Shown piece by piece: positions 3,298-37,565 of a stretch of DNA of 37,833 nucleotides; the stretch's first letter is position 1; every line of letters begins with the position of its first letter. The notes under the pieces are model-generated. The model worked only from the letters and a program-made list of their open reading frames with translations. It was not told the DNA's origin and did no database searches. This stretch comes from Octopus sinensis (Eukaryota), in assembly GCF_006345805.1 (NCBI RefSeq), contig NW_021835876.1, forward strand, positions 1-37,833, read 5' to 3'. Made by a program: the position numbers and the translations under genes.

Positions 3298-3712
3298 CTG
3301 GTGGTGAGCTGGCAGAAACGTTAGCATGCCGGGCAAAATGCTTAGTGGTATTTCATCTGCTGTTATATTCTGTGTTCAAATTCCGCTGAGTTTGACTTTG
3401 CCTTTCATCCATTCGGGGTCGATAAATTAAGGACCAGTTATGCACTGCGGTCGATATAATTGACTTAATCCGTTTGTCTGTCCTTGTTTGTCCTCTCTAT
3501 CTTTAGCCCCTCGTGGGTAGTAAAAAATAGATATTTCATCTGCTGTTATATTCTGTGTTCAAATTTTGCCGAATTTGACTTTGCCTTTCATCCGTTCGGG
3601 GTCGATTAAATAAATACTGGTTACGCACTGGGGGCGATGTAAATGACTTAATCCCTTTGTATGTCCTTTTTTGTCCCTTCTATGTTTAGTTCCCCTGTGG
3701 ACAATAAATAGA
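3298..3712 (+). mobile_element. SINE family B with internal tandem duplication
   Basis: gagctggcagaaacgttagcatgccgggcaaaatgcttagtgg head; the block atttcatctgctgttatattctgtgttcaaatt...gactttgcctttcatcc occurs twice (about 3350 and 3534). Confidence 0.85.
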
Positions 3713-4220
3713 AAATGTTCTTGAATAGGAAATAGCAACTTCCCCCATCACTAATACTAAGGAGAGAAGGGGTCAAACTAAAGCAGTTAACCTGAGCAAA
3801 AAGAAAAAAAAAGAAAAATAGTGCAATAGGTGTACAACAACATATAGTAAACAAATATGAAAAAAAAATGTGCATTGGCAATTGGGGTGGGGGGGTAGAA
3901 CTTGGAAAATTCATATCGGGAATGTTCAGAGTCCTCTCACCAATTCCCCATCCGTTGGCAATTTTTTTTGTTTATATTCGTTTACTAGACATTATTTTAC
4001 ACCTAGTACACTATTTTTAAAAATTTATTTTGTGACCTTGGGTGGGTGGGGTGCAGACTCAGAAAGTGGATGTTAAATGATGATGATGAACAGTGGCGAA
4101 CTCGTTAGTCAGAACTGGCTCAACCCATCCTGGTCGAGTGCCACTGCAAGTACATGTAAGTACATAGTCAATCAGGTAGCACAAACAAGTGCCATTTGTG
4201 GTGACTATGCTACCAATACC

Positions 4221-4547
4221 ACCATCAACTGCTACAAAGTTGAAAGAAATGCTTTCAAAAGAATCTTCTACAAAGGCATTAAAACTAAGGGTCAGAACTG
4301 TGGAAGTAGCAGAATTAAGCAATGGCTAATTAGCTCAGGTGAGATGTAGCTTGCATTTATGTCAGAAAAAGTCATCACAGATACTTTCTCACTAATGAGG
4401 CAACTTGCAGTTATTGATGTTGGATAAGCCTTTGATAGGGTGCTATGTTCAGTGACTTGGTGGTTGCTAAGGAAAGAAGGCGTGAATAATTGTTTTGTGA
4501 AATCTGTGTAAGTCAGGAGCAAAGATGTTGTTAGCAAGGTGAGTTAG
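4221..4547 (+). pseudogene. Degenerate RTE-clade LINE reverse transcriptase fragment
   Basis: One frame with stops reads TINCYKVERNAFKRIFYKGIK...GEM*LAFMSEKVITDTFSLMRQLAVIDVG*AFDRVLCSVTWWLLRKEGVNNCFVKSV. This follows the RTE RT pattern CYKGKGDAL..NYRGIKL...EMQFGF...TTDAIF..RQL...DLEKAFDRVPR..IWW.LRKLG. Confidence 0.85.
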
Positions 4548-4599
4548 CAGGATGTTCTATGAGGAATTTAATATATTATTAGTTAGGTGGTTATGGCTT

Positions 4600-5145
4600 G
4601 GTTCTCAGACCCCTCCCTATGTGTTTATGTGTGTGTCAACTTATGTTTATATGGACATCTCACTATGTCTCTCTCTCTATATGTGTGTGCATTTATATAT
4701 ATGTATGTGGGTGTGTATATATATGTGTATATATTTGTGTGTATGTGTATATATGTGTGTGTATGTGTATATATGTGTGTGTATGTGTATATATTTGTGT
4801 GTATGTGTATATATTTATGTGTGTTTGTGTATATATTTATGTATGTGTATATATTTGTGTGTATATGTTTGTGTGTATGTGTATATGTTTATGTGTGTAT
4901 GTATATATATTTGTGTATGTTTGTGTGTATGTGTATATTTGTGTGTATGTGTATATTTGTGTGTATGTGTATATTTGTGTGTATGTGTATATGTGTGTAT
5001 ATATGTGTATGTGTATATATTTTTGTATGCGTATATGTGTGTGTATGTGTATATATTTATGTATGTGTGTGTGTGTGTGTGTGCTCTTGTATGTATGTAT
5101 ATATGTATGTATGAAGCTGTGTCAATGTACGTATACATATATACT
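4600..5145. repeat. (TG/TA) compound microsatellite with an ~18-bp unit GTGTATGTGTATATTTGT
   Basis: Direct inspection; explains the C/V/Y/I-rich ORFs at 4552-5236. Confidence 0.95.
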
Positions 5146-5399
5146 CATTGATAATAACACACACTTACATTCTAACACCTATACACGCACATACTCACAC
5201 ACACACATTGTCTATCTGAATGACTTTATTTGCTGATTTCGTCTGCTAGTTGTTTCCATAGCAACAAGCAAAATCTGAAGGTAAATCCACAGAAACCTAT
5301 TCAAATATTTGCTGAAGATTTACATCTAGAGTTGTTTGGACTACTACTACTACTACTACTACTACTAATAATAATAATAATAATAATCACAATACAAAT

Positions 5400-5870
5400 C
5401 AAATTTGCTGACATGGCCGATGACAGCACTGCCTGACTGGCACCCGTGCTAGTGGAACATTGAAAGCACCATCCAAATCGTTGCCAGGGTTGCTGACTGG
5501 CTCCCATACCGGTGGCACATAAAAAGCACTATTCGATTATGATCATTACCAGCATCACCTTACTTGTGCCGGTGGCATGTGAAAAACAACATTCAAGCGA
5601 GGTCGTTGCCAGTGCCGCTGGACTGGCTCCTGTGCAGGTGGCACTTAAAAAACACCATTTGAGTGTGACTGATGCCAGCACCGCCTTACTGGCCCTCATG
5701 CCAGTGGCACATAAAAGCACCCACTACATACTCAGAGTAGTTGGCTTTAGGAAGGGCATCCAGCTGTAGAAACTCTGCCACATCAGATTGGAGCCTGGTG
5801 CAGCCATCTGACTCACCAGTCCTCAGTCAAACTGTCAAACCCATGCCGGTATGGAAAGCGGACATTAATA
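5400..5870 (+). mobile_element. SINE family C
   Basis: Internal gtggcacataaaaagcac units, ggaagggcatccagctgtagaaactctgcc, tail ggaaagcggacattaataataat. Confidence 0.85.
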
Positions 5871-7147
5871 ATAATAATGTTAATAATAATAGTTGTAATA
5901 ATAATAATTATAATGATGGATGGAATGCTCCTTGTTATGTGGTGGAGTGGCGGTGGTTAATAGCTGGAGGGGGATTTTCTAAGGCATATGTTGGATATTG
6001 TTTAGTCTGGTCACCTTCTAGCATGCAAACCCATGATCACAGACATCCTAGCCGTGACCTTTGATCTTCTTGTCATTTTTTTCCCTTTCTATCTCATTGG
6101 CATGTAAAACTGAATAATACTGTACCATATATGTCTTTTTTAAGTGAAGTGTCACTTCAGGGAAATTTTGTTACTATTTCTTGTAGATCAAGCATCCATG
6201 TAGGGGCTTCTTGCTGGTTAATTCTAATGGTTTGAAATTCTTGTAATGTTATTGTCTTTCTAACTCTTTTGTTCCAATTCATTCTTCACTGAGCAGACCT
6301 AGTATCAACGAAGACTTTGGTTGTTCTGAGGCTATAGTAGAAGGTGCCATGCAAGTGAGACTGAACTCAGAACCATGTGGTTTGGAAGCAAACTTCTTAC
6401 CAACGCAGCCATGCTGACGATGCCTATTTTTTCCAAAAAAAAGTTACAATTAAGCATGAGGCTAAATTACAAAATTTCGAAAATGAAATGAGGCTGTTTT
6501 TATCAAAGACCATAAAAATAAGAGGATGTAAAAAAAAAAAAAAAAAAACCTATAAAACGTAATAAAAAGAAAATAATGAACATCTTCATTTACTAGTAGA
6601 AAACTCTAAAATAGATCAAAGTGAAAACTGATTGAACACCTAAAGTAACTTTAACGTATGACCATTTATAGTAGACTCAATTAGTTGCATAACCCATCCT
6701 TTTCAAGATTAAAGCAGTGTTTGAATATTAAATTTGAGTGAATGAAGCGTGAAAGCTTACATTAACTGAATCAAAAATTATCTTGCAGAAGATAGAAAAG
6801 TTTAACTTTACATAAGTTATTAAAGAAATATTGTATCCTTTGAATATGTGTGAAATTAAAAATTAAAATCTGAAATTAATAAAATTAGTAAATTTTTTGT
6901 ACTTAGAAATAGAATTGCTTCTAGCAGATCCTCTTTCTTTATAAAATTCCTTAAATCAGATTTAATTATTTTCAGTGCACTAACCATTCTTATAAGTGGA
7001 GGTGTATGGCTTAATGATTAAGGTGTTGGATTCTTGATGGTAAGGTCATGGTTTTGGTTTCTGGGTCACGCAACGCATTGCATTCTTGTGCCAAAAACTT
7101 AATTTCATATTGTTTGAGTCTACTCCACTGGTAAAAATGAACAATAC

Positions 7148-7562
7148 AGGCGTAGGAGTGGCTGTGTGGTAAGTAGCTTGCTTACCAACCACATGGTTCC
7201 GGGTTCAGTCCCACTGCATGACACCTTGGGCAAGTGTCTTCTACTATAGCCTCTGGCCGACCAAAGCCTTGTGAGTGGATTTGGTAGACGGAAACTGAAA
7301 GAAGCCTGTCATACATATGTATATATATGTATGTGTGTGTGTGTGTGTGTGTGCATATGTTTGTGTGTCTGTGTTTGTCCCCCAACATCGCTTGGCAACC
7401 GATGGTGGTGTGTTTACGTCCCTGTAACTTAGTGGTTCGGCAAAAGAGACTGATAGAATAAGTACCAAGCTTACAAAGAATAAGTACTGGGGTTGATTTG
7501 CTCGTCTAAAGGCGGTGCTCCAGCATGGCCACAGTCAAATGACTGAAACGAGTAAAGGAGTA
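7148..7562 (+). mobile_element. SINE family A, full length (best copy in window)
   Basis: Head aggcgtaggagtggctgtgtggtaagtagc with B box-like gggttcagtccc, CORE-like accttgggcaagtgtctt, internal (TG)n, tail aaatgactgaaacgagtaaag. Confidence 0.9.
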
Positions 7563-8034
7563 ATTCTGCAATGGATTGTTGTGCCATTCAGGAAAGAATA
7601 TATACGCCAGAGTAACTGGGAAGCCGGCCCACTTAAACACCGAAGTTGATGAAATCGACTAGTCCCCTCCTTCTGAATTCAGCCCTTGTGGCAAATACAG
7701 AAAGGGTTATTAGTACTAGGTGTTTGTGTGTGTGCACTTCTATCTCCTTGTTGTGACATTGTGTGATACTTTTAAGTGAACATTTCCATTATGCAATGCA
7801 AGCAGCTTCATTCATTTCCACTTTTCCTTAAAAGCATGTCCTGGATATATTAGCTCAGCTTGGAATGGCTGGGACTTCATAACAGGGAGGGTATCTGGCA
7901 GAGAAAGATCTGCCTGAATGAATTCTCCTTGATCCATGAAAACCTTGAAAAATAGGCGTTCATTTAAATTAATCGTTCTCAACCAGAGTCCATACAACCC
8001 TTAGGGGTTCATAAAAGATTTTCTTGTTTATATG

Positions 8035-8429
8035 CAAGGAGTGGCTGTGTGGTAAGAAGATTGCTTCCCAGCCACATGGTTCTGGGTTCAGTTCCACTGC
8101 ATGGCACCTTGGGAAAATGTCTTCTATTATACCCTGAGGCTGATGAGTCTTGTTAGTAGATTTGGTAGACAGAAATTGAAAGAAGCCAATCGTGTATGCA
8201 TGTATGTATGTATGTATGTATGTATATATATATATATATATGTTTGTGTGTCTGTGTTTGCCCCCCCACACACGCACACATTTGCTTGACAACCAATGTT
8301 GGTGTGTTTACATCCTGGTAACTTAGCGATTCACCAAAAGGGACCGATAGAATAAGTACTAGTCTTACAAAGAATAAGTCCTGGGGTTGATTCACATGAC
8401 TAAAAGCAGTACTCCAACATGGCCGCAAG
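8035..8429 (+). mobile_element. SINE family A
   Basis: Colinear with 7148-7562. Confidence 0.85.
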
Positions 8430-8784
8430 ACTGTAAAGCTGGATGGGGAGCAGCTTCATGCTAAGAGATTAAAGGCTAAAATATGATAGAAAAGGGTCTG
8501 AAGCAGTTTCTTGTTGGAGAGCCACATGACAACTCACACTTCAGGAGAGAATGGATGGGAGTGATAAGATAGAGCCGGAAACAGAATCGGTCATACTTTA
8601 GCATCTACAAATCCAGGGCACTCTAACATCGCAAACCCCTGTCTTGCATTGGATTGGCTAATGTAGTCTTTTATACATGCGTGGAGTGTACCAGACTAAA
8701 ACAACAAAAGAAAAAGAAAAATGGAGACCATGACATTTGGTCTTTGAATGAAATTATCTGTGGATCACATTTACTTCAATTTTG

Positions 8785-9004
8785 GTGAGTTGGCAGAATT
8801 GTTAGCACACCGGGTGAAGTACATTGTGGTATTTCATCTGTTTTGAGTTCAAATTCCGCTGAGGTCGACTTTGCCTTTCATCCTTTCGGGGTCGATTAAA
8901 TAAGTACCAGTTAATCACTGCAGTCGATATAATCGACTTAATCCCGGTGTCTGTCCTTGTTTGTCCCCTCTATGTTTAGCTCCCTGTGGGCAATAAGGAA
9001 ATAA
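8785..9004 (+). mobile_element. SINE family B
   Basis: ggtgagttggcagaattgttagcac...gaggtcgactttgcctttcatcctttcggggtcgattaaataagtacc. Confidence 0.85.
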
Positions 9005-10194: not shown

Positions 10195-10284
10195 AGGTGA
10201 CATAAATGTACACACTTTCACACCTATGTGCTTTTCTCAGGTGACATAAATGTACACACTTTCACACCTATGTGCTTTTCTCAG
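10195..10284. repeat. Perfect 44-bp tandem duplication
   Basis: aggtgacataaatgtacacactttcacacctatgtgcttttctc occurs twice back to back, followed by ag. Confidence 0.95.
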
Positions 10285-18824: not shown

Positions 18825-19333
18825 CTAAACTGTTAATATATGAATGCGAAAGAGATAGTTGAATAACTGTAAACCTACTTTGAAGCTCAAAGCATTTGAA
18901 ACATGTTACTGAAAAGAACTGGGATTAGCTGGACTGACCATCACACGAATGAGTCAGACTTGATGAAATGGGAGCTGAATAAGAATTTTTGGCAACTGTT
19001 AAGAAGAGAATGGAATATTATTTGGCATGTCATCAGGGCCAGGACCTTAGCACCCATATATATATATATATTCTAGCTAGAAGACTTCCTCTAATATATG
19101 GGTGCTAAGGTCCTGGCCCTGATGACATGCCCAAAATAATATTCCATTCTCTTCTTAACAGTTGCCAAAAATTCTTATTCAGCTCCCATTTCATCAAGTC
19201 TGACTCATTCGTGTGATGGTCAGTCCAGCTAATCCTCAGTTCTTTTCAGTAACATGTTTCAAATGCTTTGAGCTTCAAAGTAGGTTTACAGTTATTCAAC
19301 TATCTCTTTCGCATTCATATATTAACAGTTTAG
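18825..19333. repeat. Near-perfect long inverted repeat (237 and 240 bp arms, 32-nt loop) made of an RTE LINE C-terminal remnant
   Basis: 18825-19061 equals the reverse complement of 19094-19333 except for three 1-bp indels. The left arm translates KLKAFETCY*KELGISWTDHHTNE...HVIRA, like the RTE AFEMWC..RMLKISWTD..TNE...GHV.R motif. Confidence 0.9.
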
Positions 19334-20289: not shown

Positions 20290-20632
20290 GCATGTGAGTG
20301 TGTGTGTTTGTGTATGTGTATATACGTGTGTGTATATGTAAGTATTTGTGTGTTTGGGTATATGTGTGTGCCTGTGCGTAAGTATTTGTGTGTGTGTGTG
20401 TGTGTGTCTAAGATTTTGTAAGTATTTGTTTTTGTGTATATATGTGTGTGTATATGTATGTATACACGTATGTGTGTGTGGCTTCCTATATATGAATATA
20501 GGTAAATGTGTGTCTGTAAATATGTGTGTATATATATATGTGTGTGTTTCTATATGTATATGTGTGTGTGTCTATATGTATATATATATATATATGTGTG
20601 TGTGTCTATATGTAGATATATATATGTGTGTG

Positions 20633-20685
<53 letters not shown>

Positions 20686-21086
20686 CTGTATATGTGTATA
20701 TATATATATATGTGTGTGTGTGTCTGTATATGTGTATATATATATATATGTGTGTGTGTGTCTGTATATGTGTATATATATATATGTGTGTGTGTGTCTG
20801 TATATGTGTATATATATATTGTGTGTGTGTGTGGCTTCATATGTATGAATATAGATAAATGTACGGCTGTAAATATATGTATATATATATATATATATAT
20901 ATCTGTGCGTCTGTATATGTATGTATATATATATATGTGTGTGTGCGTTATGTGTCTATATATATATGTGTGTGTTTGTGTATATAATATCTACATATGT
21001 GTATATATATGTGAGTGTGTGTATATATATATATATATATCTGCATATGTGTTCATATATGTGTGTGTGTCTGTGTGTGTGTATTT

Positions 21087-21125
<39 letters not shown>

Positions 21126-21623
21126 TACATACACACACATGCACACAGCCCTTTTCATTGCTAGTTTTTGGGTAAAAGATAGGAAGTGCCTGCTTAAAGA
21201 AGAAACTAAAAATCAAGATTAAAAAACATATAAAAGAGTCTAAAAACATTCTGAAAGTTGATGGGGTGAAGAGTAGGTGGTGGTGGGGCTTGTGGTAACA
21301 CACTCTATCTTTTCTTATGCAGATGCTGTGGGGGTGGAGAGCGAAGGGGGTGAAGGGAGAGATGGCTGGGTGGGGGTGGTAGTAAGTATATTTGGTGCTG
21401 CTTTATTTTTGTTGTGATAGGGGTTTGGGGGAGAAAGTGTGTGTGTGTGTGTGCTGTAAATGCAAAGTAAGGAGTAAAAGATAAGGGACATATATGTTGT
21501 GTCTGTATGTGTGTGTGTACATATGTGTATATATTTGTGAATATTTCTATGTATGAATGTGTATGTGTATATGTCTGTACGTGTGTGTGTGTGTGTATAT
21601 GTAAATATCTCTGTATATGTGTT

Positions 21624-21664
<41 letters not shown>

Positions 21665-21719
21665 AAATGTGTGTATATATGTGTTTGTGTATATGTGTGT
21701 GTTTAAATATATGTTTGGT

Positions 21720-21756
<37 letters not shown>

Positions 21757-21800
21757 GTGCATGCGTCTGTATGTGTATATGAATATATGTGTGTCTGTAA

Positions 21801-21841
<41 letters not shown>

Positions 21842-21876
21842 CATGTGTGGCTATGTGTATATATATGTGTGTGTGG

Positions 21877-21931
<55 letters not shown>

Positions 21932-22000
21932 TATATATATGCATATAAGTGTGTGTATGTATGTATATACATACATATCTATCTATATATATATAATGTT
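20290..22000. repeat. Large compound (TG)/(TA)/(CA) microsatellite block
   Basis: Direct inspection; source of many spurious ORFs. Confidence 0.95.
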
Positions 22001-25384: not shown

Positions 25385-26030
25385 TTGATTTGTTCATCAT
25401 GCAGTCTGTTCATCACCTTGTCTGTTCATCATTCATGTTCATCATCCATGTCTCTTCATCATTCATATCTGTTCATCATCCATGTATGTTCTTTGCCCAT
25501 GTCTGGTCATTGCCCGTGTCCGTTCATTGCCCGTGTCCGTTCATTGCCCGTGTCCGTTCATTGCCCGTGTCCGTTCATTGCCCGTGTCCGTTCATTGCCA
25601 GTGTCCGTTCATTGCCCGTGTCCGTTCATTGCCCGTGTCCGTTCATTGCACGTGTCCGTTCATTGCCAGTGTCCGTTCACTGCTTATGTCTGTTCATCAT
25701 CCATACTTGTTCACTTGCCATGTCTGTTCACTCTCCATGCCTGTTCACCATCTGGTCTGTTTATTATCTTTTCCTCAGTCATTTGTGTCCTTTCACCACA
25801 TTTACCTTTTCACTATCTATTCTCCATCTGTATCCGTTCTCTGTCTATGTCTGTTTACTGTCTGTGTCTATTTACCGACCATATATGTTCATTGCCCAGT
25901 CTGATCGTTGTGTAGTCTTTTTTCCTTACAAGTCTGTTCACCACCTCATCAGCTTAAATCTAAAGAATTCTCTCTCTAGCCTATTTAACATATGTTCACG
26001 ATGTGTCCTGTTCACCATTTAGTCTGTTTC
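25385..26030. repeat. 17-bp minisatellite: 10 near-perfect units TTGCCCGTGTCCGTTCA (25510-25679) inside a degenerate array
   Basis: Unit read directly; the overlapping ORFs repeat every 17 codons (3 units). Confidence 0.95.
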
Positions 26031-33476: not shown

Positions 33477-33854
33477 AGCAGTAGAAAGCAAAACAGATGG
33501 CATATGAAGTCCACATGTTGTAGTCTTTATTTTGATTCTCTGTACTTTCTCAAGTGTCTTCACATCAAACTGAGACTCCCAAGACTTTTCTTGTTGCTTT
33601 TGTGCTTCATGAACTCTTCATATCCTTTGTGTGTTTGTGTATGTCACTTTTAGAGAACCCCCCCTGGGTTAATAAGATCCCAGCAAAGCTCTGGGGTCAA
33701 TGCCATTGCCTAATTCCCTCCCCTCAAAATTCTTGGCCTTCTGCCTTAACCAGAAATCATCATCATCATCATCATCATCATTATTATTATTGTTATTATT
33801 ATTATTATTATGAAGATGATGATCATTCTTCTTCTATTATTATTATTATTATGC

Positions 33855-34130
33855 TAAGGCAGTGAAATGGCAGAATCATTAGCATGTCAGACAAAGTACT
33901 TAGCAGTAATTCGCCCATCTTACTGTTCTGAGTTCAAATTCAGCCGAGATTGACTTTGCCTTTCATCCTTTAGGGGGTCGATAAATTAAGTACCAGTGAA
34001 ACAGTGGGGTCGATGTGATCAACTAGTCTCCTCCCCCAAAATTTCAGCCCTTGTGCTTATAGTAGAAGGTATTATTATTGTTGTTGTTATTAATATTATT
34101 GTTATTATTGTTATTATTATTGTTATTATT
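33855..34130 (+). mobile_element. SINE family B with (ATT/GTT)n tail
   Basis: aaggcagtgaaatggcagaatcattagc...gagttcaaattcagccgagattgactttgcctttcatcc. Confidence 0.85.
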
Positions 34131-34133
34131 GTG

Positions 34134-34171
34134 CTAACATACTTTCTTTTTTTCTTTTCGTTTAGGTAAGT
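34134..34171 (+). promoter_or_regulatory. Candidate recursive splice site (3' splice site directly followed by a 5' splice site)
   Basis: Branch motif tgCTAAC (A at 34137), tract ctttctttttttcttttcgttt, AG at 34164-34165, then GTAAGT at 34166-34171; no other AG for about 95 nt upstream. Confidence 0.55.
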
Positions 34172-34885
34172 ACCATCTTTATTGAGGTTTGAAGTTAACA
34201 TGCTTGCTTTATTGGTAAGATATACATTTCCTCTTACATATTTTGCCATTTGATATGGCTGTATGAAAAAAAATTAGAGAAAGCACTGCAATAATGAAAT
34301 AAAGAAATGAATTATATCTGTATGTACATACAATGGAAACTGCTTACGATAATGAGGAATAATTTTATTGATGTTCGCCAGACCTAAATGCTTTATTTAA
34401 AACGTTTAACACATTGCCTGCCATGAGCCCCATTTGGGGATCCGCTAAAGACAGCCTCATTGCTAGTAGTCCGTTGTATTTAAAGTGAATTGCTTATGCA
34501 CATTGCATTTACAGAGGTGTGTTTAACAATATTTAACACTTAAAGTTTGTCCTTATTAGCTCTGGTTAATTCTAGAGGACATTTTATGTCATAAATCGCA
34601 ATTTTTGAAATACAAAAATATTGACTGTTTTGAAAACGTTTTTTTTTTTTTTTTTTTGCCTTTCCCATCTATATCATTTCCCATCTATATCTATTTCATA
34701 CACAATTGCATTTTATACAATAGTTTCAAATAAACTAAAATTTTTATTATTGGAATTGAATAGAAAAAGATAAATATACTTTTATTCAGTGATCACCATT
34801 TGGGACTTTTCCAAATATTTATCATAATTTCCACAATAATTCACATATGAAGAAAATTTAAATAGTATATATATTAAACAGTTCT

Positions 34886-35407
34886 ACGGGCATATGGTGT
34901 AGTGGCTAAGAGTGCAGGATACCAATCTCAAGATTCTGAGTTCGATTTCTGGCAGTGACCTGAATAATAATAATAATAATATCAAAAAATACCTTAGAAT
35001 GAGAACTCAGGTTCAAAATTTTCCCAAGACACATGATGAAGGCTGGAAGGTATATCAGCTGAAACGTTGTTAACAAGAAACAAAATGAGGACAATAATAA
35101 ATCTTAGAGCTAGTTATAAACAGTAGCTGCAACACATCATGACGTATATTTGCCATTTAAATATGGCTAACCCCTAAGGGTGGATGCTACTGTAGTTTGT
35201 AGCCACAGGAGGACATCTCCTCCAGCTTGCTATAGACTTCCCTTTGCAAATACTGATAGGGCACAGATAGTGTGTCTATAGCCAGCTGGAGGAGATGTCC
35301 TCCTGGGGCTACAAACTACAGTAGCATCCACCCTTAGGGGTTAGCCATATTTAAATGGCAAATATACGTCAAAATGAGGACAATATCCGTCAATTGTAAA
35401 TAATGTA
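34886..35407 (+). mobile_element. tRNA-head hammerhead SINE (copy 2) interrupted by a hairpin element
   Basis: gggcatatggtgtagtgg (A box), gagttcgatttc (B box), motif gacac ATGATGA a ggctg...cagct GAAA cgtt at 35028-35070; tail resumes at 35371. Confidence 0.8.
35141..35370. mobile_element. MITE-like foldback element with 97-bp terminal inverted repeats
   Basis: 35141-35237 equals the reverse complement of 35274-35370 with 2 mismatches; 36-nt spacer. Confidence 0.85.
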
Positions 35408-36989: not shown

Positions 36990-37565
36990 ATTAAAATGTG
37001 TGTGTCGTTAAACATCTAGTTAAGCTGGAAACTACATAACGTATGTGTGAAGATATGTGTGTATCGATAGGTATGCATATGTGTGTGTGGGTGTATGTGT
37101 GTGTGTGTGTGCACGTATATGTGATGTATGTGTGTATATATGTGTATGTGTGCGTGTGTATATATATATGCATGCATGTATATATACTTGTGTATATATA
37201 TATATGTAAATGTATATGTGTATATGTAATTGCATGTGTGTATACGTATGTGTATATATATGTATATAGATATGTGTAATTGTGTGTGTGTACATGTGAT
37301 TGTATGAGTGTATATATATGTGCATGTGTGAGATTGTATTTGTGTTTGTGTGTGTGCACTTGCTTGTGTATGTGTGTGCATATATATTAATTAATTGGAT
37401 GTGTGAGTGGAAGACAATATGTTAATGTGACTGAATTGATAAGAATATTGATGGACGTGGGTGTGTGCATGTGTGTGTGTGTGTGTGTGTATTCATGTGA
37501 GATATTTATATATGTGATTGAAATAATGCGAGCGTGTATGAACACTAATATGTATGTATGCATGT
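36990..37565. repeat. Degenerate (TG)/(TA) microsatellite block; (CA)n also at 37790-37830
   Basis: Direct inspection. Confidence 0.95.

What the first reader, a model, noticed from the sequence alone, without database searches (positions are those of the whole stretch)
34134..34220. Consensus-like recursive splice site with a 49-nt poison RS-exon
Seen: branch motif CTAAC 28 nt upstream of the AG, a ~22-nt pyrimidine tract, a ~95-nt AG-free zone, then AG|GTAAGT. A second donor TTG|GTAAGA follows at 34215, defining a 49-nt segment (34166-34214) with a stop in all three frames (TAA at 34167, TGA at about 34183 and 34190). Established: this is the architecture of ratchet points in Drosophila long introns and of vertebrate RS-exons. 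Inference: the window is inside a very long + strand intron removed stepwise; I know of no description of this in cephalopods. It directly follows a SINE (ATT/GTT)n tail, which supplies the AG-free zone.
Basis: partly seen in the sequence, partly recalled or inferred. Interest (0 to 1): 0.7.

Follow-up and report, generated by a model that had tools for sequence, protein, structure and literature searches.

The report
Unproven recursive splice-site motif in octopus
The octopus DNA really does contain a textbook-looking "recursive splice site" followed by a 49-base decoy exon, but nothing available here shows that the cell uses it, and it could equally be a chance motif.

Summary

The octamer AGGTAAGT alone is at chance level: 1 seen, 1.5 expected. 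The combination of a very strong acceptor with a perfect donor is rare. It is the best of 338 AG|GT sites in 125 kb of octopus strand sequence, and about 0.0002-0.002 are expected per window. A 2.7-Gb genome should still hold roughly 15-110 such cores by chance, and about 1-10 once a second donor and a branch motif are also required.

The architecture matches fly ratchet points and vertebrate RS-exons, including the stronger first donor. It misses the fly TT rule at -5/-6, where -6 is G.

I could not establish + strand transcription, a host gene, conservation or any RNA evidence. The window has no recognisable exon and no strand skew, and no orthologous DNA was retrievable.

Rough estimates:
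- fortuitous and unused, about 0.5
- genuine recursive site, about 0.27
- ordinary non-coding or poison exon, about 0.18

Verdict on the interpretation: cannot tell. Interest is modest.

The parts
33856..34067 (+). SINE-like short interspersed repeat, + orientation, immediately upstream of the site
   Evidence: Self-BLAST finds about 10 copies in the window at 70-83% identity. The alignment fixes the 5' end at AAGGCAGTG. Copies also occur in O. bimaculoides locus L001. Neither ARAGORN nor Rfam recognises it as a tRNA.
34070..34132 (+). (ATT/GTT)n tail of the SINE; forms most of the present 95-nt AG-free zone (34069-34163)
   Evidence: TRF reports period 3 and period 21 arrays. The last upstream AG is at 34067. 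Putative target-site duplication: ATTATTATGCT (33845-33855) against ATTATTGTGCT (34125-34135), 10 of 11 identical.
34134..34138 (+). CTAAC branch-point-like motif; A34137 is 28 nt upstream of the AG
   Evidence: An exact CTAAC in the -16 to -42 window occurs at 1.8% of random positions, and YTRAY at 20%. The motif straddles the end of the putative target-site duplication, so it predates the SINE insertion.
34140..34163 (+). Polypyrimidine tract, 22 of 24 pyrimidines, with G at -6 and T at -3 relative to the junction
   Evidence: Only 0.36% of 25-nt windows in this DNA have at least 22 pyrimidines. The acceptor score ranks in the top 5 of 6558 AGs.
34164..34171 (+). AG|GTAAGT: acceptor dinucleotide abutting a consensus donor (candidate ratchet point; junction between 34165 and 34166)
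   Evidence: It is the only AGGTAAGT in the window on either strand, against 1.53 expected. GTAAGTA gives 7 contiguous base pairs to the U1 5' end; the U1 sequence is my own knowledge.
34166..34214 (+). 49-nt candidate cryptic or poison RS-exon (not a multiple of 3; stops in all three frames)
   Evidence: 18% of random 49-mers from this window have stops in all three frames.
34215..34220 (+). Second donor GTAAGA (TTG|GTAAGA), weaker than the first (6 against 7 or more U1 base pairs)
   Evidence: A GTRAG within +25 to +105 occurs at 12% of random positions.

Best explanation
The most likely single reading is a fortuitous, unselected splice-site-like module in repeat-rich, non-coding octopod DNA. 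A T-rich tract just 3' of a SINE tail happens to end in TTTAG and to abut GTAAGT, and another GTAAG lies 49 nt further on.

In this reading the site is either not in a + strand intron at all (intergenic or antisense) or is used only as splicing noise. The sequence itself is shown. Non-use is inferred from base rates, not demonstrated.

If the + strand were transcribed as an intron, the same letters would be expected to act as a cryptic recursive site:
1. U2AF and U2 bind the pyrimidine tract and A34137.
2. The 49-nt segment is defined as an exon by the donor at 34215.
3. The upstream exon is joined to G34166, which regenerates a GTAAGT donor.
4. That donor out-competes GTAAGA, so the 49 nt are removed with the rest of the intron.
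For: - The defining octamer is at chance frequency: 1 seen, 1.53 expected.
- A core as strong as this is expected about 0.0002-0.002 times per window. That is about 15-110 per 2.7-Gb genome.
- Adding a second donor (12%) and a YTRAY motif (20%) still leaves about 0.4-3 per genome, before allowing for post-hoc choice of features and for possible amplification by an unrecognised repeat family.
- Only about a quarter of random positions would lie in a sense-strand intron, because introns and intergenic DNA are roughly 1:1.
- The window shows no exon, no strand skew and no second RS-like site; the other two AGGTGAGT have no pyrimidine tract.
- 44% of the window is repeats, and a SINE inserted 1 nt upstream of the branch A, within CTAAC.
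- G at -6 breaks the TT rule met by 196 of 197 fly ratchet points.
- In human, only 3,022 of 1.67 million motif-passing intronic AGGT sites have read support.
Against: - The full composite is rare by chance, about 1e-5 per window or fewer than about 10 per genome.
- It reproduces the published architecture in detail: a cryptic exon of about 50 nt, a first donor stronger than the second, and an out-of-frame segment with stops.
- RP-type motifs are 4-22 times enriched on the sense strand of large introns in all five invertebrates tested, including a sea urchin.
- Octopods do have giant introns: the Argonauta caskin-2-like gene spans 335 kb for 1346 aa.
- If octopus has even some tens of true sites, true and chance sites of this quality would be about equally numerous.
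Confidence: 0.5

Rival explanations
1. Genuine recursive splice site. The window lies in a long + strand intron, and the site is a ratchet point with a 49-nt cryptic RS-exon.
- The upstream exon is spliced to 34166.
- The regenerated GTAAGT donor is then used in preference to GTAAGA at 34215.
- The 49 nt therefore never reach mRNA; if they are included, they trigger nonsense-mediated decay.
For: - Sequence architecture matches fly ratchet points and vertebrate RS-exons.
- It is the best AG|GT of 338 by a wide margin, and the core is seen in only 1 of 4500 locally shuffled windows.
- The donor hierarchy fits the competition model.
- A branch-like CTAAC lies 28 nt upstream.
- The 37.8-kb window has no recognisable exon, and 335-kb octopod genes exist.
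- Sense-strand enrichment of such motifs is seen in all invertebrates tested.
Against: - There is no evidence of + strand transcription, a host gene, conservation or RNA intermediates.
- G at -6 violates the fly TT rule, and -3 is T rather than the preferred C.
- No other RS-like site is present in 38 kb.
- Large, repeat-rich genomes (vertebrates) show no motif enrichment, so the number of true sites in octopus may be small.
- The chance expectation is non-negligible genome-wide.
Confidence: 0.27
2. Ordinary expressed exon. 34166-34214 is a real 49-nt cassette, poison, 5'UTR or lncRNA exon on the + strand that merely begins with GTAAGT. This is the 'expressed RS-exon' class, in which the exon junction complex normally suppresses the regenerated donor.
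For: - A strong acceptor and a good donor flank a 49-nt segment.
- Thousands of annotated mammalian exons, and fewer than 50 fly exons, begin with a donor-like sequence.
- Stops in all three frames fit a non-coding or NMD-inducing exon.
Against: - Stops in all frames exclude a constitutive coding exon.
- The first donor is stronger than the second, which favours skipping.
- No transcript or homologous ORF was found.
- By my rough count, few real exons would combine all of these features.
Confidence: 0.18
3. Minus-strand origin. The pyrimidine tract is the complement of a decayed poly(A) tail of a - strand retroposed sequence, with AATAAA at 34183-34178 lying 14 nt upstream of the A-rich tract 34163-34140. 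The splice-like motif would then be a by-product, as in antisense-Alu exonisation.
For: On the - strand the order is AATAAA, then 14 nt containing ACTTACCT, then AAACGAAAAGAAAAAAAGAAAG. A second A20 tract lies at 34640-34660 on the same strand.
Against: Only 1 of 20 A-rich tracts in the window has such a signal, which is what chance predicts. No other copy of 34133-35000 exists in the window or in L001, and no target-site duplication was found. This reading explains origin only and does not exclude use as a splice site.
Confidence: 0.05

Closest known systems
Drosophila intronic ratchet points with cryptic RS-exons (Ubx, kuz, Bx; Hatton 1998, Burnette 2005, Duff 2015, Joseph 2018/2021)
   Same: - A strong acceptor juxtaposed with a GTAAGT donor.
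- A downstream cryptic exon of about 50 nt with its own weaker donor.
- An exon body that is out of frame.
- A prominent pyrimidine tract.
   Different: - TT at -5/-6, found in 196 of 197 fly sites, is not met here (-6 is G), and -3 is T rather than C.
- Fly sites are ultraconserved islands in the longest 3% of introns and have junction, lariat and saw-tooth evidence. None of that is known here.
- The organism is a mollusc.
Vertebrate RS-sites and RS-exons in long neuronal genes (Sibley 2015; Blazquez 2018)
   Same: - YAG|GTRAGT motif.
- An RS-exon defined by a downstream 5' splice site.
- Premature stop codons if the exon is included.
- Competition between donors.
- A large, repeat-rich genome context.
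   Different: Vertebrate sites were defined from RNA-seq or iCLIP data and conservation in genes longer than 150 kb. Here the gene, the transcribed strand and conservation are all unknown.
Pseudo-exons and cryptic splice sites born next to retroposon tails (e.g. antisense-Alu exonisation; DMD pseudo-exons)
   Same: A T-rich tract beside a SINE tail supplies the acceptor context, and splice-like signals sit in otherwise repeat-rich non-coding DNA (listing of PMC7175933).
   Different: The branch motif and pyrimidine tract lie outside the SINE, and the SINE is in sense orientation, not antisense. A retroposon-tail origin for the tract itself was not supported.

Membership tests
Drosophila-type ratchet point (0-nt recursive splice site) | [quoted passage not shown] | tested here: met
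   CTTTCTTTTTTTCTTTTCGTTTAG|GTAAGT. It is the top-scoring AG|GT of 338. Position -3 is T, not C.
Drosophila-type ratchet point (0-nt recursive splice site) | TT at positions -5 and -6 (196 of 197 fly sites) | tested here: not met
   -5 is T and -6 is G (G34160). This rule may be specific to flies.
Drosophila-type ratchet point (0-nt recursive splice site) | Downstream cryptic RS-exon (about 50 nt) whose donor is weaker than the ratchet-point donor | tested here: met
   The segment is 49 nt. GTAAGT(A) scores 4.7 and GTAAGA scores 3.2 on positions +3 to +6. This is a sequence-level test only.
Drosophila-type ratchet point (0-nt recursive splice site) | Lies in a very long intron, on the transcribed strand | tested here: inconclusive
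   No Pfam-recognisable exon on either strand in 37.8 kb and no consistent TA or GC skew. The host gene was not identifiable.
Drosophila-type ratchet point (0-nt recursive splice site) | Motif conserved well above flanking intron in related species | not testable with these tools
   No orthologous DNA was retrievable. The ORF over the site has no homologue and both metagenome scans were empty.
Drosophila-type ratchet point (0-nt recursive splice site) | RNA intermediates: exon-to-RP junction reads, recursive lariats, saw-tooth coverage | not testable with these tools
Vertebrate RS-exon (Sibley 2015) | YAG|GTRAGT site followed by an exon-defining 5' splice site, with premature stop or frameshift on inclusion | tested here: met
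   TAG|GTAAGT with a donor at 34215. The 49 nt is not a multiple of 3 and has stops in all three frames.
Vertebrate RS-exon (Sibley 2015) | Located in a long (more than 150 kb) gene, typically brain-expressed | not testable with these tools
   The host gene is unknown. The only indirect datum is that an octopod gene of 335 kb exists.
Ordinary cassette, poison or UTR exon | Present in mature transcripts | not testable with these tools
   The ORF across the site is absent from the protein collection. No transcript search by nucleotide sequence was possible.
Octopod SINE with microsatellite tail (upstream neighbour) | Short (about 210 nt) dispersed repeat with many diverged copies and a simple-repeat 3' tail | tested here: met
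   About 10 copies in the window and copies in O. bimaculoides L001. The tail is an (ATT/GTT)n array. A tRNA-like head was not detected by ARAGORN or Rfam.

The most novel reading that the evidence does not exclude
This is a working recursive splice site in an octopod. That would make it the first described in any mollusc or lophotrochozoan: a ratchet point plus a 49-nt poison RS-exon that lies just 3' of SINE insertions inside a giant intron. It would imply that stepwise intron removal is used for the very long introns of cephalopod (probably neuronal) genes.
Probability: 0.25. Interest if true: 0.55.

Novelty: new member of a known kind. Interest (0 to 1): 0.33.

Why it matters
Recursive splicing is documented with RNA evidence in flies and vertebrates. 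In a few other invertebrates it is inferred only from motif enrichment. The paper library holds no report for molluscs or cephalopods.

Octopods combine an invertebrate lineage with vertebrate-like, repeat-rich genomes and genes of hundreds of kilobases. They are therefore a good test of whether recursive sites accompany intron expansion or are replaced by other mechanisms.

A single unvalidated motif does not answer that question. It does point to a cheap genome-wide test using public octopus assemblies and RNA-seq. If the site is only a chance motif, the finding has no further importance.

Tried and rejected
1. U1 snRNA pseudogene on the - strand. ACTTACCT is the complement of the donor, but there is no similarity beyond the 8-mer and no Rfam hit anywhere in the window.

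2. Retroposed poly(A) tail as the origin of the pyrimidine tract. AATAAA lies 14 nt upstream of the A-rich tract on the - strand, but 1 of 20 A-rich tracts with such a signal equals the chance expectation. No target-site duplication was found.

3. Site as part of a repeat family. There is no second copy of 34133-35000 in the window or in L001. A low-copy family in the rest of the genome cannot be excluded.

4. Finding the host gene or an exon.
- ORF lists were uninformative.
- Pfam on 8.9 kaa of non-repeat ORFs from both strands gave no hit.
- Eleven window ORFs are not in the protein collection.

5. Orthologous or transcript sequence. The protein search with the - strand ORF over the site gave none, and two metagenome DNA scans gave none.

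6. Strand of transcription from composition or motif asymmetry. There is no consistent skew, and the donor-motif excess on + is largely due to TG-type microsatellites.

7. Small sense-against-antisense enrichment test in octopus introns. This was not feasible.
- Older O. bimaculoides models are not on record.
- The only cephalopod genomic hit is a 335-kb gene for which no DNA is served.
- L001 is a 4.9-kb gene.

Full report
**Observation**

Reading the sequence and a script confirm every element at the stated coordinates.
- CTAAC lies at 34134-34138, and A34137 is 28 nt upstream of G34165.
- The pyrimidine tract 34140-34163 has 22 of 24 pyrimidines, with an unbroken run of 18 nt.
- The last upstream AG is at 34067-68, which leaves 95 AG-free nt.
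- TTTAG|GTAAGT has its junction between 34165 and 34166.
- A second donor, TTG|GTAAGA, starts at 34215.
- The 49-nt segment 34166-34214 has stops in all three frames: TGA 34190 and TAA 34196, TAA 34167, and TGA 34183.

**Context**

The window is octopod DNA.
- Its dispersed repeats match SINE-derived tails of Octopus bimaculoides protein models at 68-92% identity.
- It gives 160 BLAST matches at about 70-88% identity to a 25-kb O. bimaculoides locus, L001.
- 44% of the window is self-similar repeat, plus many TG/TA microsatellites.

Directly upstream of the site lies a SINE-like element in + orientation (33856-34067), with about 10 diverged copies in the window. Its (ATT/GTT)n tail spans 34070-34132.

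The flanks ATTATTATGCT (33845-33855) and ATTATTGTGCT (34125-34135) look like a target-site duplication. Joining them gives an empty site that already contains CTAAC and about 68 AG-free nt. The SINE therefore lengthened the acceptor context but did not create it.

The branch motif, the pyrimidine tract, the AG|GT junction and the 49 nt are in DNA that is single-copy within the window and L001.

**Is it more than chance?**

The octamer AGGTAAGT is not: 1 was observed against 1.53 expected, and 75 of 100 shuffles have at least one.

The combination is unusual.
- I used a rough position-weight score built from generic metazoan frequencies recalled from memory, so it is approximate.
- The acceptor side ranks in the top 5 of 6558 AGs, and the donor in the top 1% of GTs.
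- The site scores 14.0, against 9.7 for the next best of 338 AG|GT sites in 125 kb of octopus strand sequence.
- Factorising these frequencies gives about 0.002 such cores per 100 kb of strand, or about 0.0016 per window.
- Shuffles that preserve local composition gave 1 core in 4500 windows.

- A GTRAG within +25 to +105 occurs at 12% of positions.
- YTRAY in the branch window occurs at 20% of positions, and exact CTAAC at 1.8%.
- Stops in all three frames occur in 18% of random 49-mers.

For a genome of about 2.7 Gb (my own knowledge), this means roughly 15-110 chance cores. With a second donor and a branch-like motif, about 0.4-3 remain. Post-hoc feature choice and possible amplification by an unrecognised repeat family would raise that figure, in my estimate to about 5-13.

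Shepard et al. found a similar background, about 0.1 looser RP-motifs per 100 kb, on the antisense strand of large introns in all animals.

**What could not be established**

The interpretation needs the + strand to be an intron of a long gene.
- I found no recognisable exon on either strand. This rests on the ORF lists and on Pfam run over 8.9 kaa of non-repeat ORFs.
- There are no RNA families or tRNAs.
- There is no consistent TA or GC skew.
- There is no second RS-like site. The other two AGGTGAGT, at 4537 and 26607, lack pyrimidine tracts.
- ORFs of the window are not in the protein collection.
- The - strand ORF spanning the site has no homologue.
- Two metagenome DNA scans were empty.

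Conservation and expression are therefore untested. One indirect datum makes an exon-free 38-kb intronic window plausible: the Argonauta hians caskin-2-like gene spans 335 kb for 1346 residues. An exon-free window fits intergenic DNA equally well, and introns and intergenic DNA are about 1:1 in animal genomes.

**Comparison with known systems**

Fly ratchet points are juxtaposed acceptor and donor sites with a cryptic RS-exon of about 50 nt.
- The exon's own donor is weaker than the regenerated one.
- The exon body is poorly conserved and usually out of frame.
- The core motif is ultraconserved.

Vertebrate RS-exons follow the same logic and carry premature stops. The candidate meets all the sequence-level criteria, including donor hierarchy: GTAAGTA gives 7 contiguous U1 pairs, and G|GTAAG gives 6.

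It fails one fly hallmark. TT at -5/-6 is present in 196 of 197 fly sites, whereas here -6 is G. Position -3 is T rather than the preferred C.

RP-motifs are 4-22 times enriched on the sense strand of large introns in fly, mosquito, bee, beetle and sea urchin, but only about 1-1.5 times in vertebrates. No mollusc was tested.

In human, only 3,022 of 1.67 million motif-passing intronic AGGT sites have strong read support. Lungfish giant introns show no wholesale shift to recursive splicing.

The library holds no paper on recursive splicing in cephalopods or molluscs.

**Weighing**

A flagged site of this quality is drawn from three pools.
- Chance sites: about 5-13 per genome by my rough accounting, of which only about a quarter would sit in sense introns.
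- True recursive sites: unknown in octopus. With vertebrate-like numbers, a few of them would show all these features; with insect-like numbers, tens would.
- Ordinary non-coding or poison exons that happen to start with GTAAGT: a few.

I applied a mild penalty for G at -6. The resulting estimates are about 0.5 for fortuitous and unused, about 0.27 for a genuine recursive site, about 0.18 for an ordinary expressed exon, and about 0.05 for other readings. These are inferences from base rates, not measurements.

**Rejected side ideas**
- A U1 pseudogene on the - strand is ruled out: similarity stops after the 8-mer, and Rfam finds nothing.
- A retroposed poly(A) tail as the source of the pyrimidine tract is not supported. 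AATAAA does lie 14 nt upstream of the A-rich tract on the - strand, but 1 such case among 20 A-rich tracts is what chance predicts.

**Verdict**

The interpretation cannot be decided with these tools.

If real, the site would be a new member of a known kind (a recursive splice site) in a phylum where none is described. That is of moderate interest and is testable directly with public octopus genomes and total RNA-seq.

Noticed in passing
window 18825-19333: Near-perfect large palindrome. The arms 18825-19061 and 19094-19333 are 98-100% complementary with a 32-nt spacer. Both arms encode a non-LTR reverse-transcriptase C-terminal-like peptide (ISWTDHHTNESDLMKWELNKNFWQLLRREWNII). It is either a very recent inverted duplication or an assembly fold-back artefact.
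   Followed up: partly
window 25391-25752 (core 25488-25697): Minisatellite of 17/34/51-nt units (GTTCATTGCCCGTGTCC), about 6 copies of the 34-mer at 91-92% identity. It creates long spurious ORFs on the + strand.
   Followed up: no
window 10195-10284: Perfect tandem duplication of a 44-nt unit (2.0 copies, 100% identity), so presumably very recent.
   Followed up: no
window 4678-5110, 20293-21131, 21491-21995, 37042-37387: Long degenerate (TG)n/(TA)n-type microsatellite blocks. They account for most of the + strand G and T excess and for several extra GTAAGT hits (20338, 20378, 20418).
   Followed up: partly
proteins P0002-P0005 (O. bimaculoides models) against window SINE ORFs, e.g. 7185-7505 and 1645-2031: Older Octopus bimaculoides protein models (caskin-like, liprin-alpha, a UBC E2, a coiled-coil protein) end in or contain peptides translated from the same SINE families (68-92% identity). 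This reflects either SINE exonisation or gene-model artefacts.
   Followed up: partly
window 34640-34660: A run of 20 T on the + strand (A20 on the - strand), preceded on the - strand by a 16-nt tandem repeat. It may be the tail of a - strand retroposed element about 480 nt downstream of the site.
   Followed up: partly
L001 5147 (O. bimaculoides CM046624.1, sense strand of a Myb-like gene at 3642-8917): This is the second-best AG|GT in the 125 kb scored: TTTTTTTTTTTATGTGGCACAG|GTGAGG. It is probably an ordinary exon start. I did not check it against the gene model.
   Followed up: no
Argonauta hians GCA_054771915.1, caskin-2-like gene (P0006): The gene range is 335 kb for a 1346-aa product, which shows that very long introns exist in an octopod with a comparatively small genome.
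   Followed up: no
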